A stretch of DNA of 64,000 bases, taken from assembly GCA_950097015.1 (NCBI GenBank), contig CATNEN010000005.1, positions 6,057,418 to 6,121,417 on the forward strand, given 5' to 3'. The notes beneath the pieces are model-generated. The model had not been told where the DNA came from, did not search any database, and saw only the letters and a program-made list of their open reading frames with translations. How positions within the stretch are numbered: position 1 is the stretch's first letter; each line of letters starts with the position of its first letter. This DNA is from Macrostomum hystrix (taxonomy: Eukaryota; Animalia; Platyhelminthes). Shown here one piece after another: positions 1,582 to 24,014 of the stretch. Position numbers and translations under genes: made by a program.

Positions 1582-1595
1582 GTTGCTATGGTAAA
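1582..1595 (+). promoter_or_regulatory. X-box-like (RFX) motif GTTGCTATGGTAAA, about 550 bp upstream of the TRP start codon
   Basis: 13/14 match to the X-box form GTTGCTATGGTAAC, in AT-rich upstream sequence. Motif match only. Confidence 0.35.
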
Positions 1596-2135: not shown

Positions 2136-5100
2136 ATGGACACCAATGCTAGCGTCCGTGGACCGGAAGATGCCGGATCAGAGGACCGGGAACTCGAGGA
2201 TGCAGAATCGCCGGTCTCTACGTGGGAAGACAGTGCAGAATCAATGAGTCAGAGAAGTGAGTCGGACTCAACTTTCTCTCTGCTGTGCGAAGAAAACTTC
2301 TTAATGTACCAAGAGCCAGAGTTGCTAGTTTTCTTCTGGGACATCAAGCACGGAGGTGTTGAAAATAGTCTGCGCAATGACCTTCTTCGAGCCATAGACA
2401 GCAGCGACTCTGAGGAGCTGAGCAGAATATCAGACAGAATCAGAAAAGGACTTCAAGACGATGATGATGCAGAAGTGAAAGTGCTGCTGCTTATGTCAGC
2501 CGCCGAGCCAGAGCTGGAACTGCTGCAGTTCTTGACTGAAAGACACGCCGACTCATGCCTGCAGGCGCGGGGTTTATCAGCTAACAACATGCTGCACTTT
2601 GTGTGCGGATGCAACAACTCAGATTCAGCAACTGCAGCCTTGGAGCTGATCTATAACAGAGTGGGCAAACAGCTGGTCAAGGAGGTCAACAACTCAAAGC
2701 AGCTGCCTGTACACATCGCAGCTAAAAACAGCAAGAATCCTGCAGTGTTTCTCTGGCTCATTTCCACCGTCGAGGACAAGAATCTGTTTTTCGTTCAAGA
2801 CGACGACGGCTACAGTGCTGTTAGCCTCGCATTTGAGAAGCAGAATTTGGACACACTCAAACAAGTGACTGAGAAGCTTGGTCTGGCGGAGTGCCTGGCG
2901 GCAAAAACTGCCAAAAATGAAAATATTTGCCTTCTAGCCGCATTCAATACAGCCAATCCTGCAGTGTTTCTCTGGCTCATTTCCACCGTCGAGGATAAAA
3001 ATATGTTTTTCGGTCACGATGATGACGGCTACAGTGCTGTTAGCATCGCATTTGAGAAGCTGAACTTGGACACACTCAAACAAGTGACTGAGAAGCTTGG
3101 TCTGGCGGAGTGCCTGGCGGCAAAAACTGCCAAAAATCAAAATATTTGCCTTCGAGCCGCATTCAATACAGCCAATCCTGCAGTGTTTCTCTGGCTCATT
3201 TCCATCGTCCAGGACAAGAATCTGTTTTTCATTCAAGACGATGACGGCTACAGTGCTGTTAGCATAGCATTTGATCAGCTGAACTTGGACACACTCAAAC
3301 AAGCGACTGAGAAGCTTGGTCTGGCGGAGTGCCTGGCGGCAAAAACTGCCAAAAATGAAAATATTTGCCTTCCAGCCGCAGCGAATTCAGCCAATCCTGC
3401 AGTGTTTCTCTGGCTCATTTCCACCGTCGAGGATAAGAATCAGTTTTTCGTTCAAGACGATGACGGCTACAGTGCTGTTAGCATAGCATTTGATCAGCTG
3501 AACTTGGACACACTCAAACAAGCGACTGAGAAGCTTGGTCTGGCGGAGTGCCTGGCGGCAAAAACTGCCAAAAATCAAAATATTTGCAAAAGAGCCGCAT
3601 TCAATTCAGACAATCCTTCAGTGTTTCTCTGGCTCATTTCCACCGTCGAGGACAAGAATCTGTTTTTCGTTCAAGACGATGACGGCTACAGTGCTGTTAG
3701 CACTGCATTTTTTAAGCAGAATTTGTACACTCTCAAACAAGTGACTGAGAAGCTTGGTCTGGCGGAGTGCCTGGCGGCAAAAACTGCCAAAAATGAAAAT
3801 ATTTGCCTTCGAGCCGCAGCGAATTCAGCCAATCCTGCAGTGTTTCTCTGGCTCATTTCCACCGTCGAGGACAAGAAACTGTTTTTCGTTCAAGACGATG
3901 ACGGCGACAGTGCTGTTAGCATAGCGTTTCTATATCAGAACTTGGAAACTCTCAAACAAGTGACTGAGAAGCTTGGTCTGGCGGAGTGCCTGGCGGCAAA
4001 AACTGCCAAAAATCAAAATATTTGCCTTCCAGCCGCAGCGAATTCAGCCAATCCTGCAGTGTTTCTCTGGCTCATTTCCACCGTCGAGGATAAGAATCAG
4101 TTTTTCGTTCAAGACGATGACGGCTACAGTGCTGTTAGCATAGCATTTGATCAGCTGAACTTGGACACACTCAAACAAGCGACTGAGAAGCTTGGTCTGG
4201 CGGAGTGCCTGGCGGCAAAAACTGCCAAAAATCAAAATATTTGCAAAAGAGCCGCATTCAATTCAGACAATCCTTCAGTGTTTCTCTGGCTCATTTCCAC
4301 CGTCGAGGACAAGAATCTGTTTTTCGTTCAAGACGATGACGGCTACAGTGCTGTTAGCACTGCATTTTTTAAGCAGAATTTGTACACTCTCAAACAAGTG
4401 ACTGAGAAGCTTGGTCTGGCGGAGTGCCTGGCGGCAAAAACTGCCAAAAATGAAAATATTTGCCTTCGAGCCGCAGCGAATTCAGCCAATCCTGCAGTGT
4501 TTCTCTGGCTCATTTCCACCGTCGAGGACAAGAAACTGTTTTTCGTTCAAGACGATGACGGCGACAGTGCTGTTAGCATAGCATTTGATCAGCTGAACTT
4601 GGACACACTCAAACAAGCGACTGAGAAGCTTGGTCTGGCGGAGTGCCTGGCGGCAAAAACTGCCAAAAATGAAAATATTTGCCTTCGAGCCGCATTCAAT
4701 TCAGACAATCCTTCAGTGTTTCTCTGGCTCATTTCCACCGTCGAGGACAAGAATCTGTTTTTCGTTCAAGACGATGACGGCTACAGTGCTGTTAGCACCG
4801 CATTTTATAAGCAGAACTTGGACACACTCAAACAAGCGACTGAGAAGCTTGGTCTGGCGGAGTGCCTGGCGGCAAAAACTGCCAAAAATCAAAATATTTG
4901 CCTTCGAGCCGCAGCGAATTCAGCCAATCCTGCAGTGTTTCTCTGGCTCATTTCCATCGTCGAGGACAACAATCTGTTTTTCGGTCACGATGATGACGGC
5001 TACAGTGCTGTTAGCATAGCGTTTCGATATCAGAACTTGGACACACTCAAACAAGTGACTGAGAAGCTTGGTCTGGCGGAGTGCCTGGCGGCAAAAACTG

Positions 5101-8100
5101 CCAAAAATGAAAATATTTGTCTTGTAGCCGCATTCAATACAGACAATCCTGCAGTGTTTCTCTGGCTCATTTCTATCGTCGAGGACAACAATCTGTTTTT
5201 CGGTCACGATGATGACGGCTACAGTGCTGTTAGCACTGCATTTTTTAAGCAGAACTTGGACACTCTCAAACAAGTGACTGAGAAGCTTGGTCTGGCGGAG
5301 TGCCTGGCGGCAAAAACTGCCAAAAATCAAAATATTTGCCTTCCAGCCGCAGCGAATTCAGCCAATCCTGCAGTGTTTCTCTGGCTCATTTCCACCGTCG
5401 AGGATAAGAATCAGTTTTTCGTTCAAGACGATGACGGCGAAAGTGCTGTTAGCTCGGCATTTTGGGAGCTGACCTTTCTCACACTCAAACAAGTGACTGA
5501 GAAGCTTGGTCTGGCGGAGTGCCTGGCGGCAGAAAATGCCAAAGGTCAATGTAGTTTGCATGCAGCGGCCTGGAACAGAGAGAATCCAGCCTTATTTCGA
5601 TGGCTCATTTCCATCGTCGAGGACAAGAAACTCTTCTTTGCAAAGGCACCAGGTGATTTCGGAAGCAATGCCGTCAGTTATGCCTTTTATCGTCAAGGGT
5701 TGGTCACAGTGAAGCTTTTGACAGACCGTTTTGGACTCAGCGAGTGTTTGAGCTGCATTGACAATCTAAATCGGGATTTGTTTTATCATTCCATTCTGAA
5801 CAGCGCGAACCCGGGAGTATTTCCCTGGCTTCTCGAGCAGGTCTCCCAGCAATGTCCAGACAAGAAGTCCAGAATTTTCGAGTTGGATTCCAACGGCAAC
5901 ACTCTGCTTCATGCACTGTTTAGGAAGGTTGATTTGTTCGGCGATGTTGATGCGCTTGCAGTGCTGATCGGCCGCATAAACTTTCTTTTTGAAAATGAAG
6001 TTGATCCAAGAAAAGAAAACAAATTCAGACTCAACTGTCTGCTTGCCGCTGAATCCAGTGCTGACAATCTCAATCGTCTTTTGCGAGCTCTTCAAAGATC
6101 AGCGCATTTGGATATCTTCAGAAATCTGCAAAGAAACTCGGAGGGCCTTCATGCAGCTCATGTCTTCTGCACTCGCTACGAGCTCCGAGTTATCGAGAAC
6201 GATTTGAGCAAGCTGTGTGGTCTCAGTCCTGACGAGCTCCTTGCAGTCCGAGTTTCTGACGGACCGCTGAAGGATGCAACTTGTCTGCACTTTGCCTGCG
6301 AATCCGGTCACAAGTTGAACATCGAATACCTTCTAAAGAAAGGACGGAAGCTGGAAGATGAGACAGACGCCGGGCAGACGAGTGTCGACTTTGCCTGCAA
6401 CAAGGCGAAGCTCGAGAATGTTTTGGATGTTGCAGAGAAGTCAGTTGGTCTCGGAAAACTGCTCAAGCTGGTTGATCCAACGAAGCGAGCTCTGAACCTT
6501 CCGGACGTTCAGAGCGCCCGAGGTCACCTGACTCGATTCAACGACTCATCGCTGAAGGCCAGCATTGAGGATGATAAATCCAGACGACAGACGAGAGGCA
6601 AGGAAGCCGGTGGGATGAAAAACGAGAGTCTGCAGGCCGGACACGGAGCTGACAGCATTTCAAAGTCCGAGGATTCGCCAGAAGTGAAAATGCTGTTCAG
6701 AGCATTCGAGCTCGACTCAAGTGAGATGCTCCGCAGCTTGATCAGTTTGGGCTTCGCCATCGATGAGATCGATGACCAGTTCTCCAGGCATGTCTTAAAG
6801 CAAATTGGCAATGGGCGGGAAAGCAGTAAGTCTCCTACAATAGCCAAGCTTCAAAAGTACTTCTCCTCAGAAGAAAGAGATTCTGAAGCTCTCATGCTGA
6901 TGGAGTACGCAGTGCTGCTCGAGAAGCCGAAGCTGCTCAATGACCTGATGCTTCTGCCACAGTTTGACATCATCCCACAGACTTTGAGGCTGCTGGTTTA
7001 TCTCAAGCCCAGAGTGAAGTCGAGCAATGTTGAGAATCTGAAAAAAGTGCAAGCTCTAGCCTTGAACATTGTCGTCAATGTTCTGGAGCACCTCTACGTG
7101 AATGCTGATGAAGAAGAGCGGAATCTTGTTTTCGACTACCTGAGTGGCTCATTTATGGTGTCAGACGGGCATCCTCAGGTTCGAGGTCCGAGGTTCCCGC
7201 CACCATTGGATTATCTTACCAGACCAATTTCAAACGATAAAACTGATCACGAAAAAGTGAGCAAAGATGCGAAGACACCAAAAAAGCCATCAGAAAAGAA
7301 GTCTGCAGCTGCAGTGATGTCAGTGATGGATCTGGTGCAGACCCTGGACTGTGACGATGTGTTTGCCACTGACTGCATCAGCCAGTTGGTGGATCAGCAG
7401 TGGAACAAGGCTCCACCGTTGCCCTGGAGCAGTCCTGCACGCTGCTGCTCATGCAACATACCGCAAAAGGTGACAATTAAACAGCGGTTCTTCATCCACT
7501 CTGCTTTTTTCCTGGTCTTTCTGCTCTACTTTGCATGGTACGTGACGGATTTCAGTCGGACAAAGCAGTCTCCGATTCTAGACGTCGTCCTGTTGGCCTA
7601 CGCGCTGTCCTTCACTCTGCAGGAAGTCAACGACTTGCTGAACAAGCTGTCTATGAAGGACATACGAATTTTCAGAATGCACATGAGATGTCCTCGCTAC
7701 TTCACCGACTTCTTCAACTACTTTGACATGCTCGGCCTGCTGCTGATGTGGGCGGGGCTGGTCCTGAAGCTGCTTGGCCGGCTGAGCGACCCCAGCCTCA
7801 TGCGCAGCTCTCAGGTCGTCCTCAGCGTCTCGTTCCTGTTCCTGGGATTCCGCTCCGTGGCCCTGCTCAGCTACTTCAAGGTCACTGGGCCGAACATCAA
7901 TATGCTGAAGAGCTTGCTGTTCAAAGACCTGCTGCCATTCTTGATCATCATGCTGGTTCTGATCTTCTCATTTGGCATTTTCTTCTTCAACCTGCTGTTC
8001 CCGGCCTTCTCAGACCTGACAGACGTCCTGGCTCTCGTGAAGATTTTCACAACGCCCCTGGCGCTGGCCTTAAGCATCTTTGAGCTCTCGCTGTTCGAGT

Positions 8101-8450
8101 CGTGCAACTCCAGCAGTCTCGCGACCGGACAGACCTGTGCGGACAGTGGAGGCAACCAGGTGTACAGCCTATTCCTGATGTTCGTGTACGTCTTGCTGGT
8201 AAACATTGTGATGTTCAACCTGCTGATCGCACTGTTCAACCGCACCGTGACAGCGATGGCCAGCAGGGCGGAGGTTCTGTGGCGCAAGAATCTGTTCGAG
8301 CTGCTGGAGGAGTTCGCAGAGGTCAGTCCGGTTCCGCCGCCGCTGTCGTTCCCGCTCTACGCCTGGAAACTGCTGCGGAGGTGCCGCCCTTCGCACTGCC
8401 GACCCTGCGCTGGCAAAGTCGGTCCTTCTGACGGCTCTGAGAGAAGCAAG
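2136..8450 (+). CDS. Exon 1 (2105 codons) of an ankyrin-repeat-containing TRP cation channel with a TRPM-like membrane core
   Basis: 6.3-kb stop-free ORF. Ankyrin motifs (LPVHIAAKN, GNTLLHALF, ATCLHFACESGH, GQTSVDFAC). Pre-S1 DVFATDCISQLVDQQW, six hydrophobic segments, S6 LLVNIVMFNLLIALFN, TRP-box-like LWRKNLFELLEEF and PVPPPLS. Strong donor AAG|GTAAGA at 8450/8451. Confidence 0.93.
2739..5585 (+). repeat. Coding tandem repeat: 13 x 219 bp (73 aa = two ankyrin repeats), followed by a degenerate 14th unit
   Basis: CCT(G/T)CAGTGTTTCTCTGG recurs at 2739, 2958, 3177 ... 5367 with an exact 219-bp period. A degenerate copy starts at 5586. Confidence 0.98.
7480..8360 (+). other. TRP channel S1-S6, pore and TRP domain coding region
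   Basis: S1 RFFIHSAFFLVFLLYFAWYV, S2-S3 YFTDFFNYFDML, S4-S5 FRSVALLSYFKVTGPNINMLKSLLFKDLLPFL, S6 and TRP helix. The layout matches established TRPM-type motifs (GP..I...M.KD; NLLIAMFN; WKFQR..LI.EY..RP.LPPP). Confidence 0.9.
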
Positions 8451-8855
8451 GTAAGAGGCCTGGTGGACTGAGGGACTGACTCTGTTACTCACAGATGATA
8501 AATGGTCTGAATATATAGCCCTTAGATTCATTCAGACAATGACCGAATCCAATTTTCAATTGCAAGAACTGATTGTGTGTACATGAATGCAAATGGCTTT
8601 GTAGCAAAGACATGCTCAGATTATAGTAAGCTGGGGCTGGTCATGAAACTCTTGAGGACTGATTAACAGTAGAAGCAAGGTGAGAGGCCTGGTGAGCGCA
8701 GGTGAACTGAGGGGCTGACTATGTTTACTCATATAGGCACTAGATTCAGTCAGACGATGACCGAATCCAATTTGAATGGAAATAACTGGTTGTGTGCACA
8801 TGATTGCAAATAAGCTCATGTTTCAAGGCGCTCTTCCTCACGGCTTCCGTTCCAG
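8451..8855 (+). other. Phase-0 GT-AG intron (405 bp) containing a degenerate duplicate of its own 5' end
   Basis: Begins GTAAGA and ends CTCTTCCTCACGGCTTCCGTTCCAG. Splicing preserves the reading frame into a coiled-coil exon. Confidence 0.8.
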
Positions 8856-9140
8856 CCGTGGTGGACGAACCGGAGCGACTTCAGCGGCTACCCCGAAGAC
8901 TTCAAGCGCTTCCTGATCTTCCAGGCCGAGCAGCTCCGGCAGCAGCGGCCACGGCTGCAGCGGGCGGTCGAGCGGCACAAGGGGGACGTCGATGTGCTGA
9001 AGGCGCACGTGGAGAACCAGGTCAAGGACCTGCGGGAGGAACTGCGGAATGAGATGAAAGAAAACTTCGAGAACCTGCAGCAGCAAATGTCGCAGGTGAT
9101 GAGCATTCTGCAGCAACTGCAGCAGCAGCGTCAGCAGTGA
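8856..9140 (+). CDS. Exon 2 (94 aa + stop): C-terminal coiled coil of the TRP channel (PWWTNRSDFSGYPEDFKRFLIFQAEQLR...LREELRNEMKENFENLQQQMSQVMSILQQLQQQRQQ*)
   Basis: 285 nt, open in frame from the acceptor to TGA at 9138-9140. GC3-rich like the membrane-domain codons. Heptad-like E/Q/L pattern expected for a TRPM-type tetramerisation coil. Missing from the ORF track in this frame because it has no leading ATG. Confidence 0.82.
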   Translation, partial: PWWTNRSDFSGYPEDFKRFLIFQAEQLRQQRPRLQRAVERHKGDVDVLKAHVENQVKDLREELRNEMKENFENLQQQMSQVMSILQQLQQQRQQ

Positions 9141-9835: not shown

Positions 9836-10848
9836 AGTCTAGAATCCCCTGTGCAAAGCAGTCTAGAATCCCCTGTACAAAGCAGTCTAGAATCCCCTGT
9901 GCAAAGCAGTCTAGAATCCCTTGTGCAAAGCAGTCTAGAATCCGCTGTGTGAGCAGTCTAGAATCCCTTGTGCAAAGCAGTCTAGAATCCCCTGTGCAAA
10001 GCAGTCTAGAATCCCTTGTGCAAAGCAGTCTAGAATCCCCTGGGTGAGCAGTCTAGAATCCCCTGTGCAAAGCAGTCTAGAATCCGCTGTGTGAACAGTC
10101 TAGAATCCCTTGTGCAAAGCAGTCTAGAATCCCCTGTGCAAAGCAGTCTAGAATCCCTTGTGCAAAGCAGTCTAGAATCCCCTGGGTGAGCAGTCTAGAA
10201 TCCCCTGTGCAAAGCAGTCTAGAATCCCTTGTGCAAAGCAGTCTAGAATCCCTTGTGCAAAGCAGTCTAGAATCCCCTGTGCAAAGCAGTCTAGAATCCC
10301 CTGTGCAAAGCAGTCTAGAATCCCCTGTGCAAAGCAGTCTAGAATCCCTTGTGCAAAGCAGTCTAGAATCCCTTGTGCAAAGCAGTCTAGAATCCCCTGT
10401 GCAAAGCAGTCTAGAATCCCCTGTGCAAAGCAGTCTAGAATCCCCTGTGCAAAGCAGTCTAGAATCCCCTGGGTGAGCAGTCTAGAATCCCCTGTGCAAA
10501 GCAGTCTAGAATCCCTTGTGCAAAGCAGTCTAGAATCCCTTGTGCAAAGCAGTCTAGAATCCGCTGTGTGAGCAGTCTAGAATCCCCTGTGCAAAGCAGT
10601 CTAGAATCCCCTGTGCAAAGCAGTCTAGAATCCCCTGTGCAAAGCAGTCTAGAATCCCCTGGGTGAGCAGTCTAGAATCCCCTGTGCAAAGCAGTCTAGA
10701 ATCCCTTGTGCAAAGCAGTCTAGAATCCCCTGTGCAAAGCAGTCTAGAATCCCCTGTGCAAAGCAGTCTAGAATCCCCTGTGCAAAGCAGTCTAGAATCC
10801 CCTGTCCAAAGCAGTCTAGAATCCCCTGTGGAAAGCAGTCCAGAATCC
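9836..10848. repeat. 24-bp minisatellite AGTCTAGAATCCCCTGTGCAAAGC (with 23-bp variants), about 42 copies
   Basis: Direct tandem periodicity. An XbaI site (TCTAGA) is present in almost every unit. Confidence 0.98.
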
Positions 10849-11060
10849 ATAAATTCAGTTTTTAGAAATTTATTAAGTATTTTTCGCTTTTAAAATTTTC
10901 AAATAGTCAAAAACAAGCACTTTCCTTTAGATACAGACCTTTGACTTGGTTTTGTTTTTTTTAATTTATTTCGGTTGTTATTTTCTTAACTGCTCCTATT
11001 GTGCACACCTTTTTAAGAACTAACAAGATTACATGCTTATCGTTTAATCTATCTTTACTT

Positions 11061-11829
11061 ACATGTTTATCTTGTGTTTACAGACCCAGCTCACATGTTT
11101 ATCTTGTGTTTACAGACCTAGCTCACATGTTTATCTTGTGTTTACAGCCCTAGCTCACATTTTTATCTTGTGTTTACAGCCCAGCTCACATGTTTATCTT
11201 GTGTTTACAGCCCTAGCTCACATGTTTATCTTGTGTTTCCAGCCCCAGCTCACATGTTTATCTTGTGTTTACAGCCCTAGCTCACATGTTTATCTTGTGT
11301 TTACAGCCCTAGCTCACATGTTTATCTTGTGTTTACAGCCCTAGCTCACATGTTTATCTTGTGTTTACAGCCCTAGCTCACATGGTTATCTTGTGTTTAC
11401 AGCCCTAGCTCACATGTTTATCTTGTGTTTACAGCCCCAGCTCACATGTTTATCTTGTGTTTACAGCCCTAGCTCACATGTTTATCTTGTGTTTACAGCC
11501 CTAGCTCACATGTTTATCTTGTGTTTACAGCCCTAGCTCACATGTTTATCTTGTGTTTACAGCCCTAGCTCACATGTTTATCTTGTGTTTACAGCTCTAG
11601 CTCACATGTTTATCTTGTGTTTACAGCCCCAGCTCACATGTTTATCTTGTGTTTACAGCCCTAGCTCACTTGTTTATCTTGTGTTTAAAGCCCTAGCTCA
11701 CTTGTTTATCTTGTGCTTACAGCCCTAGCTCACATGTTTATCTTGTGTTTACAGCCCTAGCTCACATGTTTATCTTGTGTTTACAGCCCCAGCTCACATG
11801 GTTATCTTGTGTTTACGGCCCTAGCTCAC
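11061..11829. repeat. 32-bp minisatellite ACATGTTTATCTTGTGTTTACAGCCCTAGCTC, about 24 copies
   Basis: Direct tandem periodicity. Confidence 0.98.
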
Positions 11830-12229
11830 TCATTTCTAACACTAAATTGTTTTACAACAGTGTTCGGGTGTCTAATGGCATGAATGCTGCTTCACAATGG
11901 TCGAGTGTACAGTTTTCGAGTTGTATTTGAGCAGTTTTAGTCATGAATTGATCAAAATATTCAAAATTATCTTGACTGAATCTGATCTGACACATGAGTG
12001 AAGCAGCAGCTGTCATCCAATGAACCGAGTCCTGTTTCAAATCCCATGACTATTTTCTCCCGAGAAATGAATTATCCCAGACTAAAAGCTGATTGACAGG
12101 AGCAATCGATGTTTATCCCAGCCATTTGCTCAAAATCAAAATAAATTATTTTGTTATAAAAGTCTCAGACTCGAACTCTGAGAACTATTGACACCTTCTG
12201 ATTAGAAACCTAATGTCTCTGGCTTGCCT

Positions 12230-12692
12230 GATGATTCACTCACTCAGTTGGCACAATGTCACAGGTGTGGCTCTTGGACTTGGCTGATGATTCACTCACT
12301 CAGTTGGCACAATGTCACAGGTGTGGCTCTTGGACTTGGCTGATGATTCACTCACTCAGTTGGCACAATGTCACAGGTGTGGCTCTTGGACTTGGCTGAT
12401 GATTCACTCACTCAGTTGGCACAATGTCACAGGTGTGGCTCTTGGACTTGCCTGATGATTCACTCACTCAGTTGGCACAATGTCACAGGTGTGGCTCTTG
12501 GACTTGGCTGATGATTCACTCACTCAGTTGGCACAATGTCACAGGTGTGGCTCTTGGACTTGGCTGATGATTCACTCACTCAGTTGGCACAATGTCACAG
12601 GTGTGGCTCTTGGACTTGGCTGATGATTCACTCACTCAGTTGGCACAATGTCACAGGTGTGGCTCTTGGACTTGGCTGATGATTCACTCACT
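12230..12692. repeat. 56-bp minisatellite GATGATTCACTCACTCAGTTGGCACAATGTCACAGGTGTGGCTCTTGGACTTGGCT, 8 full copies plus a partial
   Basis: Units start at 12230, 12286, 12342 ... 12678 and are almost invariant. Confidence 0.98.
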
Positions 12693-12710
12693 AAGTGTTT
12701 GAGGTCTTGT

Positions 12711-13021
12711 GCTGGAGTCGCAGCAGGATGTTAGCTGGAATCGCAGCAGGATGTTAGCTGGAATCGCAGCAGAATGTTAGCTGGAATCGCAGCAGGATCG
12801 AAGCTGGAATCGCAGCAGGATCGAAGCTGGAATCGCAACAGGATCGAAGCTGGAATCGCAGCAGGATCGAAGCTGGAATCGCAGCATGATCGAAGCTGGA
12901 ATTGCAGCAGGATTGTTCCTGGAATCGCAGCGGGGTTGTACCTGGAATCGCAGCAGCATTGTAGCTGAAATCGCAGCAGCATTGTAGCTGGAATCGCATC
13001 AGGATGGGAGCTGGAATCGCA
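12711..13021. repeat. 23-bp minisatellite GCTGGAATCGCAGCAGGAT(GTTA/CGAA), about 13 copies
   Basis: Direct tandem periodicity with variants clustered along the array. Confidence 0.95.
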
Positions 13022-15169: not shown

Positions 15170-15741
15170 CTCGAACTCAACTCGGGGTTTGGTGGGTCCT
15201 TTGTGTAGCCGCACAGATTCTCTCTTGTGTTGAGGCACAATTTGAGTACAGGACTCATTCTTTTAAATGCTGAGCAGCCAAGAATGTATTTTACCTGTCA
15301 TTGAAACTGATGCAAATGGAGGCTGCGAATGGGGGATGGTCATTTTGTCTCCTACTCAAACTCAACTCAACTAGTAAGTCTACTCAGTGCAGCCATGCAG
15401 AAATATTTCTATATGAGCTCAGAAAGCATTGCGATAGAGGAGCCCTAAAAACTGATGCACACAGTCGCAATGCAGTGTGGCCTGCGATGCCCATCCTTCT
15501 GTTGCTAGGCAACAATAAACAAACTGGCGCCAATTTAAGAGCCGGAGTGGAGCATCGTCTTCGCTCTTCATTTGCGACGGCAGCTTTCAAGCAGCCGACT
15601 GACCGACATCCACCGACCGAGTCTCTCCGTTTCTAGGCGACTCTCTCCGTTGCTAGGCGACTCTCTCCGTTGCTAGGCGACTCTCTCCGTTGCTAGGCGA
15701 GACTCTCCGGATCTCCCATTGCTGCTGGAGTGCAGGTGAGG
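15170..15741 (+). promoter_or_regulatory. Non-coding module copy 1: X-box GTTGCTAGGCAAC (15501-15513), forkhead-type AATAAACAAA (15514-15523), 20-bp X-box repeats (15621-15710), splice donor CAG|GTGAG (15736)
   Basis: Blocks homologous to 18140-18700. Perfect 13-bp X-box. Function is inferred. Confidence 0.6.
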
Positions 15742-15882: not shown

Positions 15883-17872
15883 ATAAAATGAGAGACACAA
15901 TGATATGAAATGAGAGACACAATGACATGACATGAGAGACACAATGACATGAAATGAGAGACACAATGACATGAAATGAGAGACACAATGACATGAAATG
16001 AAAGACACAATGACATGAAATGAGAGACACAATGCCATGAAATGAGAGACACAATGACATGAAATGAGAGACACAATGACATGAAATGAGAGACACAATG
16101 ACATGAAATGAGAGACACAATGACATGAAATGAGAGACACAATGACATGAAATGAGAGACACAATGACATGAAATGAGAGACACAATGATATGAAATGAG
16201 AGACACAATGACATGAAATGAGAGACACAATGATATGAAATGAGAGACACAATGACATGAAATGAGAGACACAATGACATGAAATGAGAGACACAATGAC
16301 ATGAAATGAGAGACACAATGACATGAAATGAGACACACAATGACATGAAATGAGAGACACAATGACATGAAATGAGAGACACAATGACATGAAATGAGAC
16401 ACACAATGACATGAAATGAGAGACACAATGACATGAAATGAGAGACACAATGACATGAAATGAGAGACACAATGACATGAAATGAGAGACACAATGACAT
16501 GAAATGAGAGACACAATGATATGAAATGAGAGACACAATGACATGAAATGAGAGACAGAATGATATGATATGAGAGACACAATGATATGAAATGAGAGAC
16601 ACAATGACATGAAATGAGAGACACAATGACATGAAATGAGAGACACAATGACATGAAATGAGAGACACAATGACATGAAATGAGAGACACAATGACATGA
16701 AATGAGAGACACAATGACATGAAATGAGAGACACAATGACATGAAATGAGAGACACAATGACATGAAATGAGAGACACAATGACATGAAATGAGAGACAC
16801 AATGACATGAAATGAGAGACAGAATGATATGAAATGAGAGACAGAATGATATGAAATGAGAGACACAATGACATGAAATGAGAGACACAATGACATGAAA
16901 TGAGAGACACAATGACATGATATGAGAGACACAATGACATGAAATGAGAGACACAATGACATGAAATGAGAGACACAATGACATGAAATGAGAGACACAA
17001 TGACATGAAATGAGAGACACAATGACATGAAATGAGAGACACAATGACATGAAATGAGAGACACAATGACATGAAATGAGAGACAGAATGAAATGATATG
17101 AGAGACACAATGATATGAAATGAGAGACACAATGACATGAAATGAGAGACACAATGACATGAAATGAGAGACACAATGACATGAAATGAGAGACACAATG
17201 ATATGAAATGAGAGACACAATGACATGAAATGAGAGACACAATGATATGAAATGAGAGACACAATGACATGAAATGAGAGACACAATGACATGAAATGAG
17301 AGACACAATGACATGAAATGAGAGACACAATGACATGAAATGAGACACACAATGACATGAAATGAGAGACACAATGACATGAAATGAGACACACAATGAC
17401 ATGAAATGAGAGACAGAATGATATGATATGAGAGACACAATGATATGAAATGAGAGACACAATGACATGAAATGAGAGACACAATGACATGAAATGAGAG
17501 ACACAATGACATGAAATGAGAGACACAATAACATGAAATGAGAGACAGAATGATATGATATGAGAGACACAATGATATGAAATGAGAGACACAATGACAT
17601 GAAATGAGAGACACAATGACATGAAATGAGAGACACAATGACATTAAATGAGAGACACAATGACATGAAATGAGAGACACAATGACATGAAATGAGAGAC
17701 ACAATGACATGAAATGAGAGACACAATGACATGAAATGAGAGACACAATGACATGAAATGAGAGACACAATGACATGAAATGAGAGACACAATGACATGA
17801 AATGAGAGACAGAATGATATGAAATGAGAGACAGAATGATATGAAATGAGAGACACAATGACATGAAATGAG
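15883..17872. repeat. 22-bp minisatellite ATGAAATGAGAGACACAATGAC, about 90 copies
   Basis: Direct tandem periodicity. Explains the 586-694 aa minus-strand pseudo-ORFs in all three frames. Confidence 0.99.
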
Positions 17873-18139: not shown

Positions 18140-18698
18140 TTCGTCTCAAACTCAACTCGAGTCTTCTCTGTGCAGATTGAAGCAAGCCCCTCAACCTGTG
18201 TGCTCAAAGTGAGCAGTGTTTAATCTCTCATGTGGCATTGAAACTGTAGCGAATGGAAGCTGAGAATGGGTTGGACAAAGTACTTTTGTCACCGACTCAA
18301 ACCCAACTCAAATGCTTTAGTAGGCCATGCAGACCTGTCTCCGTATGGACTCAGTGTTCATGTACTTTAATCAGCTCATAGGATGTTTGAGTAGCACAAA
18401 CTGGAGCACACAGTCGCAATGCAGTGTAGAATGTATGCTCAGCCCATGCTTCTGTTGCTAGGCAACAAATAAACAAATTCGCACCGATTCAAAGTTACTG
18501 TCGAGTATCCGTTTTCTCTTCATTCACAGCCAACTGAATCATTTTTTAAACTGCTGAAGCCTCTGAGTCTGTCTGTTGCTAGGCGAGTCTCTCCGTTGCT
18601 AGGTGAGTCTGTCCGTTGCTAGGCGAGTCTCTCCGTTGCTAGGTGAGTCTCTCCAGATCGCCCATTGCTGGCAGTGTCCAGAGGACTCAAAGGTAAAG
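18140..18698 (+). promoter_or_regulatory. Non-coding module copy 2: X-box (18454-18466), AAATAAACAAA (18467-18477), acceptor-like TTTTCTCTTCATTCACAG, 20-bp X-box-like repeats (about 18566-18655), donor AAG|GTAAAG (18693)
   Basis: Shares with copy 1 the blocks CATTGAAACTG, CACACAGTCGCAATGCAGTGT, CTTCTGTTGCTAGGCAAC, AATAAACAAA, CTCTTCATT and CCATTGCTG. Confidence 0.6.
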
Positions 18699-19620: not shown

Positions 19621-19800
19621 TTTCTCAAATGAGGATATATCGATTAAGGGACCTTTTGCCACGGAAAACAGATAAGTATGTACAAAGAGACAGAGAATGT
19701 AAAATCAGGAACGATATACCACATTTAAATTTGACACACCAATTTTAAACTATTTGACTGGGCGAATAAATTAATGAAAGAAGTAAAACCCAGCTGTTTT

Positions 19801-21413
19801 ACTTGCTGTAGTACTGTAGTGATATTGTACTTGCAGTAGTACTGTAGTGATATTGTACTTGCAGTAGTACTGTAGTGATATTATACTTGCAGTAGTACTG
19901 TAGTGATATCATACTTGCAGCTGTAGTGATATCATACTTGCAGTAGTACTGTAGTGATATCATACTTGCAGTAGTACTGTAGTGATATCATACTTGCAGT
20001 AGTACTGTAGTGATATTGTACTTGCAGTAGTACTGTAGTGATATTATACTTGCAGTAGTACTGTAGTGATATTGTACTTGCAGTAGTACTGTAGTGATAT
20101 CATACTTGCAGTAGTACTGTAGTGATATTATACTTGCAGTAGTACTGTAGTGAAATCATACTTGCAGTAGTACTGTAGTGATATTATACTTGCAGTAGTA
20201 CTGTAGTGATATCATACTTGCAGTAGTACTGTAGTGATACTATACTTGCAGTAGTACTGTAGTGATATTATACTTGCAGTAGTACTGTAGTGAAATCATA
20301 CTTGCAGTAGTACTGTAGTGATATTATACTTGCAGTAGTACTGTAGTGATATTATACTTGCAGTAGTACTGTAGTGATATTATCCTTGGAGTAGTACTGT
20401 AGTGATATAATACTTGCAGTAGTACTGTAGTGATATTGTGCTTGCAGTAGTACTGTAGTGATATAATACTTGCAGTAGTACTGTAGTGATATTGTGCTTG
20501 CAGTAGTACTGTAGTGATATCATACTTGCAGTAGTACTGTAGTGATATTATACTTGCAGTAGTACTGTAGTGATATCATACTTGCAGTAGTACTGTAGTG
20601 ATACTATACTTGCAGTAGTACTGTAGTGATATTATACTTGCAGTAGTACTGTAGTGAAATCATACTTGCAGTAGTACTGTAGTGATATTATACTTGCAGT
20701 AGTACTGTAGTGATATTATACTTGCAGTAGTACTGTAGTGATATTATCCTTGGAGTAGTACTGTAGTGATATAATACTTGCAGTAGTACTGTAGTGATAT
20801 TGTGCTTGCAGTAGTACTGTAGTGATATAATACTTGCAGTAGTACTGTAGTGATATTGTACTTGCAGTAGTACTGTAGTGATATCATACTTGCAGTAGTA
20901 CTGTAGTGATATTATACTTGCAGTAGTACTGTAGTGATATTATACTTGCAGTAGTACTGTAGTGATATTATACTTGCAGTAGTACTGTAGTGATATTATA
21001 CTTGCAGTAGTACTGTAGTGATATTATACTTGCAGTAGTACTGTAGTGATATTGTACTTGCAGTAGTACTGTAGTGATATTATACTTGCAGTAGTACTGT
21101 AGTGATATCATACTTGCAGTAGTACTGTAGTGATATTATACTTGCAGTAGTACTGTAGTGATATTGTACTTGCAGTAGTACTGTAGTGATATTATACTTG
21201 CAGTAGTACTGTAGTGATATTGTACTTGCAGTAGTACTGTAGTGATATTATACTTGCAGTAGTACTGTAGTGATATTGTACTTGCAGTAGTACTGTAGTG
21301 ATATTATACTTGCAGTAGTACTGTAGTGATATTGTACTTGCAGTAGTACTGTAGTGATATTGTACTTGCAGTAGTACTGTAGTGATATTGTACTTGCAGT
21401 AGTATTGAGTGAT
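19801..21413. repeat. 28-bp quasi-palindromic minisatellite GTAGTACTGTAGTGATATTATACTTGCA, about 57 copies, with an internal 364-bp (13-unit) duplication
   Basis: Direct periodicity. The rare variants GATACTATAC and TTATCCTTGGAG each recur 364 bp apart. Confidence 0.98.
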
Positions 21414-21525
21414 AATTTGCTTGCAGCATTGCTGCAGTATGAAGGGATTATTTGAGGCAAAAAGAGAGAAAGAATATGTTGGCGTTTAATTAGACTATTT
21501 TTTAACATCATATTTTCTTATTCAG

Positions 21526-21693
21526 TTTCGGCAGCCTTCTAACTGCTCTCGCACTGACAGCCTCTGAGTCTCAGCGTTGCTAGGCGAGTCTCCCCCCGTT
21601 GCCCGGCGAGTGTCTCCGTTGCTAGGCGAGTCTCAGCAAGTCGCTCACCGCTGCTGTTGCAGCTGCGGCTGCATCGCGGACTCATCGGTGAGT
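21526..21693 (+). promoter_or_regulatory. Non-coding module copy 3 (5'-truncated): GTTGCTAGGCGAG repeats and donor TCG|GTGAGT (21688)
   Basis: CAGCCTCTGAGTCT...CGTTGCTAGGCGAGTCT...GGACTCA is homologous to 18555-18692. Preceded by an acceptor-like TTTTCTTATTCAG. Stop codons in all three + frames. Confidence 0.5.
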
Positions 21694-22207
21694 GTTGTTG
21701 GCATTGTAGTTTGCAATTGACTGGAAAAGTACAATTTGCATACTGGCGTTTGCTGACTCTGACCATAGACACCAATAGGAAATAAAGTGCGAATTTACTG
21801 ATTGGACGGGTTTGAAGCTTTTTGCTGAAATGGTAGATTTACGCACTAGGAAGCCTAGCATAAGTGCATTGATTTATGACCAAGTGTGTGTGCGCAAGAC
21901 CAGCTCCTTCGGCCCATAGACAATACCCGTCTGGGATTTACTGCATAGTAGCTCAGAAGAGGGATGGCACGGAGATCAAGTGGGGCATCATTTACCGCAC
22001 AGTTGCGGAATTTACTGCACACTTCAATCTATTTCTTTGATGGCCTTTGGGCCATAAACTATACACGAGCTTGAGACGTTTACGCACACTTGGTTACATG
22101 TCAATGGGCTGGTGGAATTTCGCTGGCGAGCTTTGTTTACAGTTTAGGCGGAAATTCTTCGTTTGGTTGTACAGTTGCCGACTGGGGCGAATATTTTGAG
22201 AACTGAA

Positions 22208-23062
22208 GGGATAATTTGCGGATTTAGGGGATAATTCGCGGATATCGGGGATAATTCACAGATTTAGGGGATAATTCGTGTATTTAGGGGATAATTCGCA
22301 GATTTAGGGGATACTTCGCGGGGATAATTAGGGGATAATTTAGGGGATAATTCACGGATTTAGGGGATAATTCGCGGATTTAGAAGATAACTCGCGGATT
22401 TAGAGGATAATTCGCGGATTTAGAGGATAATTCGCGGATTTAGAGGATAATTCGCGGATTTCGGGGATAATTCACAGATTTAGGGGATAATTCGCGGGTA
22501 TAATTAGGGGATAATTTAGGGGATAATTTGCGGATTTCGGTGATAATTCGCGGGTTTAGGGGATAATTCGTGTATTTACGAGTAGGGGATAATTCGCAGA
22601 TTTAGGGGATACTTCGCGGGGATAATTAGGGGATAATTTAGGGAATAATTCGCGGATTTAGAAAATAACTCGCGGATTTAGGGGATAATTCGCGGATTTA
22701 GAGGATAATTCGCGGAAATCGGGGATAATTCGCGGATTTAGGGGACAACTCGTGGATTTAGGGGATAATTCGCGGATTTAGAAGATAACTCGCGGATTTA
22801 GGGGATAATTCACGGATTTGGAGAATAATTCGCGGAAATCGGGGATAATTCGCGGATTTAAAGCACAATTCGCGGAAATCGGGGATAATTCACGGGTTTA
22901 GGGGATAACTCGCGGATTTAGGGGATAATTCGCGGATTTAGAAGATAACTCGCGGATTTAGAGGATAATTCGCGGAAATCGGGGATAATTCGTGGATTTA
23001 CTGGATTATTCGCGGATTTAGAGGATAATTCGCGGTTTTAATGGATAATTTGTGGATTTACT
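22208..23062. repeat. Degenerate 20-bp minisatellite GGATTTAGGGGATAATTCGC, about 40 copies
   Basis: Direct imperfect periodicity. Confidence 0.93.
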
Positions 23063-23740
23063 GTTGAAATATTTTATTTTCGCCTCCGTTCTATCGATAT
23101 CTAGCTTAATTAATGTTCTTGTTATCTTCAATTAATATCTCTAGCAGAGAGGCCAGTTACAAGCGGCTATTTCTAAGACTTAAGGAGGCGTGGGAAATCG
23201 ACTATCTTTTCCTGATATTGCACTCACTTGGATGTTATGTTCTCAATCGAATTATATTTAGATGATCTTAAAGCAAACAATCACAAATATGAAAACTCAC
23301 TATAAAATTACTGAGAGAAAGTGATCCCCAAACACAAGCGTTTAATGCTTACTCACGAATCCTTTAGTAAGCTTACAACTGGCGGAAATATGTTTTCACA
23401 ATAAATAGTGGATTAGGAGTTTCAGGAATTCTAATCTCAATGAAAATATTTTTATTCTTGACTAAGGTTTAGACGGAGGTTTAGAGCTGGCCAGGGATAG
23501 CAATGGCCGATGGCGGCCTAATTAGATCGGATTAGAGGGTCGGGCGAACTCTTTCTCTCAGTGCCAGAGTTTTATATAATCCGGCCAAAACGGCCGCCAT
23601 TTGACAGCAGCCTCCAAGCGAATCCTAGAGCTCCTGCAAACGCATCCTCGCACAGGAGGAAAAGCTGAATATTCTCTGGTCTTTGCAAGCGCGCACAGAT
23701 GTAAAAATCGCATAGATTAAATTGTAACACTTCACTGTAT

Positions 23741-23968
23741 AATTCGTGGAATTACGGGATAATCTCTTAATTTGAGGACTTAGAGGATAATTCGCGGATT
23801 TAGTGGATAATTCGTGGAATTACTGTATAATTCGTGGATTGACAGGATAATCTCTAAATTTGCGGATTTAGAGGATAATTCGCGGATTTAGGGGATAATT
23901 CGTGGAATTACTGTATAATTCGTGGATTTACGGGATAATCTCTTAATTTGCGAATTTAGAGGATTAAT
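23741..23968. repeat. Second cluster of the GGATAATTCG 20-bp family
   Basis: Same motif as 22208-23062. An internal block of about 120 bp (ATTACTGTATAATTCGTGGA...GGGATAATCTC) is repeated. Confidence 0.8.
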
Positions 23969-24014
23969 TTGCCTATGGGTTGATAAGAGCAACATTTTTT
24001 CTGTTTCAGAAAAA

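What the first reader, a model, noticed from the sequence alone, without database searches (positions are those of the whole stretch)
2739..5585. Hypervariable 'code' positions in a homogenised ankyrin array fused to an ion channel: candidate variable-repeat recognition receptor
Seen: 13 units are identical over long stretches, including synonymous sites (the 37 nt GACTGAGAAGCTTGGTCTGGCGGAGTGCCTGGCGGCA in all copies), yet differ strongly at a few fixed codons. After SxAF the triplet reads EKQ, EKL, DQL, DQL, FKQ, LYQ, DQL, FKQ, DQL, YKQ, RYQ, FKQ, WEL; its first codon takes 7 forms encoding 7 amino acids. Other variable sites are G(Y/D/E)S, S(L/I/T/S)A, N(E/Q)N, C(L/K)(L/R/P/V)AA(F/A) and (VQ/GH/IQ)D. 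Known: mapped onto the consensus DxxGxTPLHLAAxxG, most of these fall on or next to the beta-turn and inner-helix x positions that form the concave binding face and are randomised in DARPins. Concerted evolution with hypervariable surface residues is the signature of fungal HET-E/NWD WD40 and ankyrin/TPR NLR sensors. Inference: a diversifying ligand or non-self sensor that gates a cation channel (immunity, allorecognition or chemosensation).
Basis: partly seen in the sequence, partly recalled or inferred. Interest (0 to 1): 0.92.

Follow-up and report, generated by a model that had tools for sequence, protein, structure and literature searches.

The report
Homogenised ankyrin array on flatworm TRP channel
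An expressed flatworm (Macrostomum-type) ion-channel gene carries 13 near-identical 73-residue double-ankyrin units that differ mainly at a few groove-facing residues. The pattern is real and unusual for an animal channel, but the array lies inside the cell, and selection for diversity or any immune or non-self role is not shown.

Summary
Window 2736-5582 holds 13 in-frame 219-nt units (86.6% mean amino-acid identity among units 1-12). The quoted 37-mer is present in all 13, and codon 34 has 7 codons for 7 residues.

What it is:
- Each unit is two ankyrin (ANK) repeats (AlphaFold pLDDT 95; best structural matches ankyrin-1, TRPA1 and NOMPC).
- The array is the N-terminus of a spliced, transcribed, 2199-residue TRP channel with a TRPM-like body.
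- Relatives are found almost only in Macrostomum lignano.
- The most variable residues sit on the exposed face of the inner helices and the adjacent turns (ANK positions 5, 9/10, 13-15).

Qualifications:
- The 13 units fall into about five cassette classes spread by block duplication (568 nt exact at offset 657).
- Synonymous differences exist (pS 0.089) and cluster with the variable codons.
- dN/dS above 1 is not established: 0.67-0.84 overall, 1.5 at a-priori binding positions (P=0.18), and only post-hoc sets or codon 34 alone stand out.
- The array precedes S1 with no upstream membrane segment, so it is cytoplasmic. Extracellular allorecognition or chemosensation is therefore unlikely.

Best reading: a concertedly evolving intracellular ANK binding or tether platform.

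The scan noted this same stretch in an overlapping window, and ANK-plus-TRPM hybrids elsewhere in this genome.

The parts
2136..8450 (+). Coding exon 1 (2105 codons) of the channel gene, from the start ATG at 2136 to the GT splice donor after 8450
   Evidence: ORF 2136-8471. RNA-derived contigs of runs X8, X16 and X10 leave the window at 8450 and continue with exon-2 sequence. Homologue alignment breaks at 8441-8450.
2136..2735 (+). Acidic N-terminus plus helical cap and degenerate ANK-like repeats before the array; no signal peptide or membrane segment
   Evidence: AlphaFold secondary structure of residues 131-200; hydropathy scan.
2736..5582 (+). Array of 13 x 219 nt (73 aa, two ankyrin repeats per unit). 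Units 1-12 average 86.6% aa identity; unit 13 is about 70% identical to the others
   Evidence: AlphaFold pLDDT 95 and pTM 0.88. Foldseek top hits are ankyrin-1, TRPA1, AnkB and NOMPC. Profile hits to TRPA1 and NOMPC ANK domains at E 3e-11 and 2e-10.
3358..3925 (+). First copy of an exact 568-nt run repeated 657 nt (3 units) downstream: a recent block duplication
   Evidence: units 4=7 and 5=8 show 0 differences.
4015..4582 (+). Second copy of the exact 568-nt run
5583..5801 (+). Degenerate 14th unit that closes the array
   Evidence: The equivalent degenerate terminal units occur in M. lignano P0001 and P0002.
6270..6416 (+). The only stretch Pfam recognises as canonical ankyrin repeats (residues 1379-1427)
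   Evidence: Pfam Ank_2, Ank_4 and Ank.
5802..7487 (+). Further ANK-like repeats and a helical linker that aligns structurally with the TRPM cytoplasmic region before S1
   Evidence: AlphaFold model pLDDT 72. Foldseek aligns 630-900 columns to TRPM4, TRPM3 and TRPM5.
7488..8261 (+). Transmembrane channel core, S1-S6 with pore helix (residues 1785-2042), followed by a TRP-helix-like LWRKNLFELL
   Evidence: Pfam Ion_trans at 1806-2045. phmmer to TRPM2, TRPM3 and TRPM4 chains at E about 1e-15. Hydropathy scan.
8451..8855 (+). Intron (GT...AG)
   Evidence: Sequence. The spliced contigs' loose end CCGTGGTGGACG... matches 8856 onward.
8856..9140 (+). Coding exon 2 (94 aa plus stop): conserved PWW...YP...FL motif and a Q/E-rich helical tail
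   Evidence: tblastn with the C-termini of P0001, P0002 and P0007. The spliced translation is 2199 aa with a single terminal stop.

Best explanation
The region encodes the cytoplasmic N-terminal ankyrin-repeat solenoid of an expressed TRP channel. The solenoid has 26 repeats arranged as 13 two-repeat units, plus several degenerate or canonical repeats. The channel belongs to a Macrostomum-lineage family whose linker, membrane core and C-terminus are TRPM-like.

The array grows and is homogenised by unequal crossing-over and gene conversion in blocks of one to three units. Some stretches (codons 1-9 and 45-61) are therefore identical even at silent sites.

A limited set of positions stays different between units. 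These are mainly the exposed face of the two inner helices and the turns beside them (ANK positions 5, 9/10, 13-15). They line the groove that ankyrin solenoids use to bind partners. The array is therefore most likely a modular intracellular binding or tethering platform, for a cytoskeletal or extended-peptide partner, that couples to channel gating in the way the ANK domains of NOMPC and TRPA1 do.

Shown here: the array, the ankyrin fold, the ANK register, the block duplication, clustering of units by gene, transcription and splicing, and the TRPM-like body.

Inferred: cytoplasmic location, partner binding through the groove, and coupling to gating.

Open: whether the retained differences are selected or merely tolerated.
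For: Array and residue pattern.

Ankyrin fold:
- AlphaFold pLDDT 95.
- Foldseek hits to ankyrin-1, Drosophila TRPA1, AnkB and NOMPC, E 1e-12 to 1e-10.
- Profile-to-sequence hits to TRPA1 and NOMPC ANK domains, which also fix the ANK register.

Channel body and gene model:
- phmmer to TRPM2/3/4 at about 1e-15.
- Foldseek to TRPM4/3/5 over 630-900 columns.
- Transcribed and spliced: contigs in two studies run 5931-8450 and jump to exon 2.
- No membrane segment or signal peptide upstream of residue 1785.

Homogenisation:
- A 568-nt exact duplicate at offset 657.
- The 13 units form one group, with bootstrap/aLRT support 92/81 for all 13 and 97/89 for units 1-12.
- M. lignano arrays carry their own fixed residues.
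- Codons 45-61 are invariant here but are the most variable stretch in the older P0001 array (pN 0.27). Their identity here therefore reflects recent homogenisation, not protein constraint.

Location of the variable residues:
- Buried pattern i, i+1, i+4, i+5 is invariant: A28 V29 A32 F33 and I64 C65 A68 A69.
- Positions 31/34/35 and 66/67/70 vary.

Hints that the differences are retained rather than random:
- Codons 34-36 differ by a mean 3.5 of 9 nt, against about 7% for the array as a whole.
- The F/A dimorphism at position 70 is a three-nucleotide difference and is present in both species' arrays.
- The E/Q dimorphism at position 62 occurs in three arrays.
- Variable positions overlap those of M. 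lignano type-I arrays (P=0.02 and 0.008).
Against: - No coordinates were available, so groove exposure rests on the ANK register plus helix periodicity, not on computed accessibility.
- About 9 of the 21 variable positions (3, 11, 13, 15-17, 20, 39, 44) lie on outer helices or linkers.
- No partner, cell type or channel activity is known.
- The array copy number rests on one assembly. Short-read contigs cannot span it, and only about 0.3 of its 31-mers are found in the RNA contig sets.
- The older type-II array (P0001) varies at other positions, so the pattern is not a family-wide rule.
Confidence: 0.6

Rival explanations
1. The array is a diversifying recognition module, analogous to HET-E/NWD and the ANK/TPR repeats of fungal NLRs. 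Positive selection acts on 'code' residues, and the array senses variable ligands or non-self and gates the channel, serving immunity, allorecognition or chemosensation.
For: - High internal conservation (86.6% aa) with hypervariable inner-helix and turn sites matches the pattern described for fungal NLR ANK repeats (PMC4986451).
- Codon 34 carries 6 residues among units 1-12. Neutral coalescent simulation gives P of 1e-4 to 1.3e-3 per codon for pi 0.15-0.25.
- The post-hoc groove set runs at 2.4 times the synonymous rate (P=0.007).
- Aromatic and charged residues alternate at exposed sites.
- Synonymous diversity is raised next to the variable codons, as under diversity-maintaining selection.
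Against: - The array is cytoplasmic, so extracellular ligands or allogeneic cells cannot reach it.
- No NACHT, NB-ARC or death-type domain is present.
- dN/dS at a-priori binding positions is not above 1 (ratio 1.53, P=0.18; within-class 0.71). The codon 34 result does not survive correction for 73 codons.
- There are only about 5 cassette classes, spread by block duplication.
- The same alternative residues recur in M. lignano arrays. This points to long retention of a small repertoire rather than open-ended diversification.
- No polymorphism data are available.
Confidence: 0.1
2. Neutral reading. The array is a young, length-selected ANK spring or tether (NOMPC-like). Its exposed residues are simply unconstrained, and the pattern is relaxed constraint plus patchy, incomplete homogenisation, with no selection for diversity.
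For: - The whole-unit dN/dS is 0.67-0.84, and the within-class omega at groove sites is 0.7-1.0.
- Synonymous and non-synonymous variation co-localise, as expected if some segments simply coalesce deeper.
- In any ANK repeat the non-consensus x positions vary first.
- NOMPC and TRPA1 are the best sequence-profile matches.
- Unit number differs widely between paralogues, at 5, about 12 and 13.
- An X-box-like motif about 540 nt upstream hints at expression in ciliated cells (weak).
Against: - Multi-nucleotide differences without intermediates occur at codons 34-36 and 70, next to 50-nt stretches with zero differences.
- The three-nucleotide F/A dimorphism at position 70 is shared with M. lignano, although each array is homogenised on its own.
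- Six residues at one codon is improbable under neutrality at the observed silent diversity.
Confidence: 0.27
3. Artefact or dead gene: the array is an assembly expansion of a shorter repeat, or the gene is a pseudogene.
For: - Two unit pairs are identical and there is a 568-nt exact duplicate.
- Short-read contigs cannot span the array, and parts of it (3801-4000, 4201-4400) have no contig laid.
- One contig joins 2717 to 2937, skipping one unit.
Against: - The reading frame is uninterrupted over 2199 codons.
- The gene is transcribed and correctly spliced in runs from two studies and in a related organism.
- An independent M. lignano assembly holds arrays of the same 219-nt unit in the same gene position.
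- The one-unit-skipping joint has only 30 nt on its shorter side, which is expected from de Bruijn contigs in a repeat.
Confidence: 0.03

Closest known systems
NOMPC / TRPN (Drosophila, PDB 5vkq) and TRPA1 (PDB 7ykr, 6v9v): TRP channels with long N-terminal ankyrin solenoids
   Same: Both have a long cytoplasmic N-terminal ANK solenoid of about 30 repeats ahead of a six-segment TRP pore. Their ANK domains are the best sequence-profile matches of the array (E 3e-11 and 2e-10) and among the best fold matches.
   Different: The membrane core and pre-S1 region match TRPM, not TRPN or TRPA. In NOMPC and TRPA1 every repeat is old and distinct, whereas here 26 repeats are 13 near-copies of one two-repeat unit. 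The repeats are about 36.5 aa long with extra short helices.
TRPM channels (TRPM2/3/4/5/8 structures)
   Same: The S1-S6 core, TRP-helix region and the helical cytoplasmic region before S1 align by sequence (E about 1e-15) and by fold over 630-900 columns. The C-terminus has a helical, coiled-coil-like tail.
   Different: No melastatin MHR1/2 (SLOG) domain was detected by Pfam; an ankyrin array stands in its place. The literature describes TRPM and its sister family TRPS as lacking conventional ankyrin arrays (PMC7306681). A 2026 survey of TRPM domain gains and losses mentions only divergent ANK-like elements inside MHR3/4 and no flatworm case (PMC13143021).
[quoted passage not shown]
   Same: Repeats are at least 85% identical to each other. 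Units are shuffled and homogenised, and variability is concentrated on inner helices and the hairpin or loop of the concave ANK face (PMC4986451; here).
   Different: There is no NOD (NACHT or NB-ARC) or effector domain; the repeats sit on an ion channel. Positive selection and repeat-number polymorphism, both shown in the fungal cases, are not shown here. The host is an animal, where only 0.8% of such repeats are highly conserved internally.
Designed ankyrin repeat proteins (DARPins)
   Same: Identical scaffold repeats differ at chosen surface positions. ANK positions 5, 13 and 14 vary in both (register; the DARPin positions are from my own knowledge of Binz et al. 2003).
   Different: DARPin positions 2 and 3 are invariant here (unit positions 23, 24, 59, 60). 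Positions 9, 10, 15 and 16, and several outer-helix and linker sites, vary here but are fixed in DARPins.

Membership tests
Ankyrin repeat (ANK) solenoid | Recognition by curated sequence models of the ankyrin repeat (Pfam Ank, Ank_2-5) | tested here: not met
   No Pfam ANK model hits the 73-aa units, whether three units are scanned alone or the whole protein. Only residues 1379-1427, outside the array, are recognised.
Ankyrin repeat (ANK) solenoid | Stacked helix-turn-helix plus hairpin or loop repeats forming a curved solenoid, with homology to solved ANK domains | tested here: met
   AlphaFold pLDDT 95 and pTM 0.88, with two helix pairs per unit. Foldseek probability is 1.00 to ankyrin-1, TRPA1, AnkB, NOMPC and DARPins. 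Profile hits to TRPA1, NOMPC, espin and designed ANK proteins range from E 3e-11 to 1e-5, with the GxS/T-A/P-x-x-x-A-A register conserved.
TRPM channels | TRPM-type S1-S6 core, TRP helix and pre-S1 helical region | tested here: met
   phmmer to TRPM2/3/4/5/7/8 chains at E 1e-15 to 1e-8. Foldseek to TRPM4/3/5 at E about 1e-12 over 630-900 columns (model pLDDT 72).
TRPM channels | N-terminal melastatin homology regions 1/2 (SLOG-like domain) | tested here: not met
   No SLOG, LSDAT or melastatin Pfam family appears at E <= 1. Residues 1-1230 are the cap plus ANK repeats.
TRPN (NOMPC) | About 29 ANK repeats joined to a TRPN-type linker and pore | tested here: not met
   The ANK part resembles NOMPC. 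For the channel half, NOMPC ranks 21st with TM-score 0.28 and is absent from the 60 best sequence matches.
Fungal-NLR-type hypervariable repeat sensors (HET-E/NWD, ANK/TPR NLRs) | High internal repeat conservation (at least 85% identity over at least 100 aa) | tested here: met
   Units 1-12 have mean 86.6% aa identity over 876 aa. The criterion is taken from PMC4986451.
Fungal-NLR-type hypervariable repeat sensors (HET-E/NWD, ANK/TPR NLRs) | Positive diversifying selection at a few positions of the binding face | tested here: inconclusive
   Overall omega is 0.67-0.84. The a-priori set gives 1.53 (P=0.18), the post-hoc groove set 2.39 (P=0.007) and codon 34 gives 6.5 (P=0.002 uncorrected). Simulation for codon 34 gives P of 1e-4 to 1e-3. 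Recombination between units invalidates tree-based site tests.
Fungal-NLR-type hypervariable repeat sensors (HET-E/NWD, ANK/TPR NLRs) | Repeat-number and residue polymorphism between individuals | not testable with these tools
   Only short de Bruijn contigs were available, and they cannot span or phase the array. The non-repeat part differs by about 0.7-0.85% between the window and the RNA contigs, so different haplotypes do exist.
Fungal-NLR-type hypervariable repeat sensors (HET-E/NWD, ANK/TPR NLRs) | NOD (NACHT or NB-ARC) module with an effector domain | tested here: not met
   The Pfam scan shows only ANK and Ion_trans. The unit type occurs only on channel paralogues in the 5.8-billion-protein search.

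The most novel reading that the evidence does not exclude
The array is an intracellular variable-recognition module. Selection keeps a set of different groove 'cassettes' while recombination shuffles and homogenises the scaffold. Different unit compositions would then give paralogous or allelic channels different intracellular ligand specificities, for example for pathogen or symbiont proteins or polymorphic self proteins, read out directly as cation flux. This would be an NLR-like logic wired to a TRP channel in an animal.
Probability: 0.1. Interest if true: 0.85.

Novelty: new variant of a known kind. Interest (0 to 1): 0.55.

Why it matters
TRP channels with long ankyrin domains (NOMPC, TRPA1) are central models of mechano- and chemosensation, and in all described cases each repeat is ancient and distinct. 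This gene shows a TRP ankyrin domain being built and remodelled now, by amplification of a two-repeat unit. The differences are concentrated on the surface that ankyrin solenoids use for binding, and the domain sits on a TRPM-like body, a family described as lacking conventional ankyrin arrays.

If the retained differences are functional, these genes are a natural experiment on two questions. One is how repeat number and groove residues tune gating or tethering. The other is whether the evolutionary regime known from fungal NLR repeats also operates in animals.

If the differences are neutral, the locus is still a clean example of concerted evolution inside a channel gene. It is also a caution that 'conserved scaffold, variable x positions' is what any young ANK array looks like.

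Tried and rejected
1. Pfam on the units returned no ANK hit, only spurious low-complexity-like matches such as DUF1292 and DUF6352. These are artefacts of summing repeats.

2. Tree-based site tests were not run. The units are recombinant mosaics and no recombination-aware package was available. I used pairwise Nei-Gojobori counts, minimum-event counts and a coalescent simulation instead.

3. Polymorphism from public runs failed. Read laying returned only 72-190-nt contigs inside the array, half of them fitting two places. The one consistent difference is at 5026 (G>T), which turns codon 34 of unit 11 from Arg to Leu in two studies. It may be a misplaced unit-6 contig, so it was not used as evidence.

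4. The DNA of P0005 is not on record.

5. Shared variable positions with the older type-II array (P0001) show no overlap beyond chance (P=0.77). The 'same code positions across the whole family' idea was therefore rejected. The overlap holds only for type-I arrays.

6. The idea of strict alternation of two unit types (E/Q at position 62, F/A at position 70) as a structural two-unit period fits units 4-12 here, but not the M. lignano arrays. It is left open.

7. Literature searches for a described ANK-plus-TRPM flatworm family found none in the held library.

Full report
**What is in the sequence.**
- Tandem Repeats Finder reports a 219-nt period with 12.8 copies and 91% matches at 2736-5543.
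- The region lies inside one open reading frame, 2136-8471.
- Phased from 2736, the array is 13 in-frame units of 73 residues, followed by a degenerate 14th unit at 5583-5801.
This includes the thirteen triplets after S-x-A-F and the seven codons for seven residues at unit codon 34.
- The quoted 37-mer occurs exactly 13 times at 219-nt spacing, against none in shuffles.

**Corrections to the observation.**
- Units 4 and 7 are identical, and so are units 5 and 8. An exact 568-nt run (3358-3925 = 4015-4582) marks a recent three-unit duplication.
- The table of variable residues shows that the units are mosaics of a few cassettes.
- At codons 31-39 there are about five classes: E-K-Q/L, D-Q-L, F/Y-K-Q, L/R-Y-Q and W-E-L.
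- In the second half of the array, units ending F..N-S-D are followed by units beginning N-P-S and carrying T31 and F/Y34.
- Thirteen units are therefore far fewer than thirteen independent draws.
- Silent sites are not uniformly identical. Mean pairwise pS among units 1-12 is 0.089 and pN is 0.073.
- Silent differences sit in the same segments as the amino-acid differences. pS is 0.13 in codons 10-27, 0.19 in codons 28-44 and 0.11 in codons 62-73. It is zero in codons 1-9 and 45-61.

**What the units are.**
- Pfam's ankyrin models do not recognise the units.
- An AlphaFold model of the cap plus five units is very confident, with pLDDT 95 and pTM 0.88. It shows two helix pairs per unit, with short extra helices in the connecting loops.
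- Its best matches among solved structures are ankyrin-1, Drosophila TRPA1, ankyrin-B and NOMPC.
- A profile of the units finds the ankyrin domains of TRPA1 (E 3e-11), NOMPC (2e-10), espin, MIB1 and designed ankyrin proteins.
- A more distant paralogue, P0007, still shows near-canonical motifs such as GDTPVHLAF and GRTAVHYAA.
- Each unit is therefore two ankyrin repeats of about 36.5 residues.
- The printed HMM alignment fixes the register. Unit position 22 is ANK position 1, so 26, 31, 34, 35 and 36 are ANK 5, 10, 13, 14 and 15. In the second repeat, 62, 66, 67, 70, 72 and 73 are ANK 5, 9, 10, 13, 15 and 16.

**Where the variable residues sit.**
- In both inner helices the invariant residues follow the buried i, i+1, i+4, i+5 pattern: A28 V29 A32 F33 and I64 C65 A68 A69.
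- The variable residues 31/34/35 and 66/67/70 fall on the opposite, exposed stripe. Residues 26 and 62 lie in the turn just before each inner helix.
- These are the highest-entropy positions.
- They overlap the positions randomised in designed ankyrin binders (5, 13, 14; from my own knowledge). They also match the inner-helix and hairpin sites reported as hypervariable in fungal NLR ankyrin repeats (PMC4986451).
- About nine of the 21 variable positions (3, 11, 13, 15-17, 20, 39, 44) lie on outer helices or linkers. DARPin positions 2 and 3 are invariant here.
- No coordinates were returned, so exposure is inferred from register and periodicity, not measured.

**The gene.**
- Exon 1 ends at 8450 at a GT donor, the intron runs to 8855, and exon 2 (8856-9140) encodes the conserved C-terminal tail. 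Evidence is tblastn with homologues and the sequence itself.
- Contigs of runs from two studies of the same organism, and of a related organism, cover 5931-8450. They then continue with the first bases of exon 2. The gene is therefore transcribed and correctly spliced.
- Those contigs differ from the window at about 0.7-0.85% of positions, so they come from another haplotype or line.
- The spliced product is 2199 residues with a single terminal stop.
- Residues 1785-2042 form the S1-S6 core. By sequence this core is closest to TRPM2/3/4 (E about 1e-15).
- A moderate-confidence model (pLDDT 72) of residues 1150-2105 aligns with TRPM4, TRPM3 and TRPM5 over 630-900 columns. NOMPC ranks only 21st.
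- No melastatin SLOG domain is detected.
- The protein is thus an ankyrin array on a TRPM-like body.
- TRPM and its sister family TRPS are described as lacking conventional ankyrin arrays (PMC7306681). A 2026 survey of TRPM domain gains and losses mentions no such flatworm case (PMC13143021).

**Relatives.**
- Searches of 5.8 billion proteins (word-indexed) and 1.8 billion cluster representatives (exhaustive) find close relatives only in Macrostomum lignano, at 51-70% identity in the channel half.
- More distant relatives occur in Opisthorchis. One is on a short metagenomic contig labelled bacterial.
- The window therefore comes from a Macrostomum-like flatworm other than the deposited M. lignano.
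- Several M. lignano paralogues carry the same 73-residue unit in the same place:
  - Five homogenised units (83% mutual identity) in P0002/P0004, with the 219-nt array visible in the genome at L001 20848-22122.
  - Five units in P0005.
  - About twelve more diverged units (68% identity) in P0001.
- The type-I unit was found only on these channel proteins.
- In a tree of units, the 13 units of this gene form one group (support 92/81; units 1-12 97/89). The P0001 units form another, with support 100/99.
- Each array therefore evolved in concert, or was amplified independently.

**Is diversity selected?**
- Over the whole unit, dN/dS is 0.84 by pairwise counts and 0.67 by minimum event counts: 35 non-synonymous against 15 synonymous events.
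- The 20 codons that vary in amino acid give 2.15, but that set is chosen after the fact. The other 53 codons give 0.02.
- For positions defined in advance from designed binders (ANK 2, 3, 5, 13, 14 in both repeats), the non-synonymous rate is 1.5 times the array-wide silent rate (P=0.18). Within that class the ratio is 0.71.
- A post-hoc set covering the exposed inner helix and turn gives 2.4 times (P=0.007). Codon 34 alone gives 6.5 times (P=0.002). That would not survive correction for 73 codons.
- A neutral coalescent simulation gives 1e-4 to 1.3e-3 per codon for six or more residues, at silent diversities of 0.15-0.25.
- Features that argue for retention of differences:
  - A mean of 3.5 of 9 nucleotides differ at codons 34-36, next to more than 50 nucleotides with none.
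  - The F/A dimorphism at position 70 (TTC versus GCG here, TTC versus GCA in M. lignano) has no intermediates.
  - The E/Q dimorphism at position 62 occurs in three arrays.
  - Variable positions overlap the two M. lignano type-I arrays (P=0.02 and 0.008).
- Codons 45-61, invariant here even at silent sites, are the fastest-changing stretch in the older P0001 array (pN 0.27). Their identity here is recent homogenisation, not constraint.
- Together this fits homogenisation that spares, or is selected not to erase, certain cassettes. It does not prove positive selection.
- The recurrence of the same few alternatives in two species suggests a small, long-kept repertoire rather than open-ended diversification.
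- The type-II array varies elsewhere (overlap P=0.77).

**Topology and function.**
- There is no signal peptide or hydrophobic segment before residue 1785.
- The region before S1 aligns with the cytoplasmic part of TRPM channels. In all known TRP channels the N-terminus is cytoplasmic (established knowledge).
- The array is therefore inside the cell. It makes allorecognition or chemosensation of external ligands through the array unlikely, although an intracellular sensor is not excluded.
- No NLR-type module is present.
- The closest working analogies are the ankyrin domains of NOMPC (tether and gating spring) and TRPA1, and the peptide-binding grooves of ankyrins.
- I therefore favour an intracellular binding or tethering platform whose unit composition is reshuffled by recombination (confidence about 0.6).

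**Verdict.**
- The ankyrin, concerted-evolution and groove-mapping parts of the interpretation hold.
- The claims of diversifying selection and of a non-self sensor do not yet hold, and the external-ligand versions are contradicted by topology.
- The combination of an internally homogenised ankyrin array on a TRPM-bodied animal channel was not found described in the literature available here.
- I rate it a new variant of known kinds, of moderate interest.

**Earlier notes of this scan.** They had flagged the same stretch in an overlapping window, the 657-nt duplication, the chimeric architecture and further ANK-plus-TRPM genes in this genome. I checked the first three directly; they agree with my results.

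Noticed in passing
window 24017-63999, and 1-1451: About 40 kb of a 24-nt satellite (consensus AACTGAGAGGGGATCAGGGAGAGG, about 1690 copies) fills the second half of the window. A related 23-nt satellite lies at 1-1451. The channel gene therefore sits in a gene island bounded by the same kind of satellite.
   Followed up: no
window 9836-13021, 15886-17872, 19800-21426, 22208-23969: A string of unrelated minisatellites lies downstream of the gene, with periods of 24, 32, 56, 23, 22, 28 and 20 nt and tens of copies each.
   Followed up: no
window 1582-1595: GTTGCTATGGTAAA is one mismatch from an RFX X-box-like pattern. It is the only match in the window (0.16 expected; 12 of 100 shuffles have at least one) and lies about 540 nt upstream of the start codon. 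This is a weak hint of expression in ciliated cells. A polypyrimidine-AG at about 2070-2081 suggests a splice or trans-splice acceptor before the ATG.
   Followed up: partly
window 15618-15709, 18564-18654, 21566-21635: Three short arrays of a 20-nt unit containing CCGTTGCTAGG recur about 3 kb apart. Another note of the scan reads them as RFX modules.
   Followed up: no
window 5026: In RNA contigs from two studies, every contig laid here reads T instead of G. This changes codon 34 of unit 11 from Arg (CGA) to Leu (CTA). It is either an allelic difference at the most variable codon or a misplaced unit-6 contig.
   Followed up: partly
window 5646-5681: Run X16 contigs have loose ends on both sides that read ...GATGATGGAGCTGCTGCTGTATCC.... 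This is an alternative sequence for part of the degenerate 14th unit, from an allele or a paralogue.
   Followed up: no
L001 10001-25531 (M. lignano NIVC01000211.1): The deposited gene model P0002 spans 15.5 kb and omits the first array unit. A single ORF at 20827-24885 encodes the array and channel. The public annotation of this family is probably fragmented around the repeats.
   Followed up: partly
P0014 / P0158 (5.1-kb metagenomic contig labelled Kangiellaceae bacterium): A 1537-aa relative, 40% identical over the ANK-linker region, is filed as bacterial. It is more likely a eukaryotic (flatworm-like) contig mis-binned in a metagenome.
   Followed up: no
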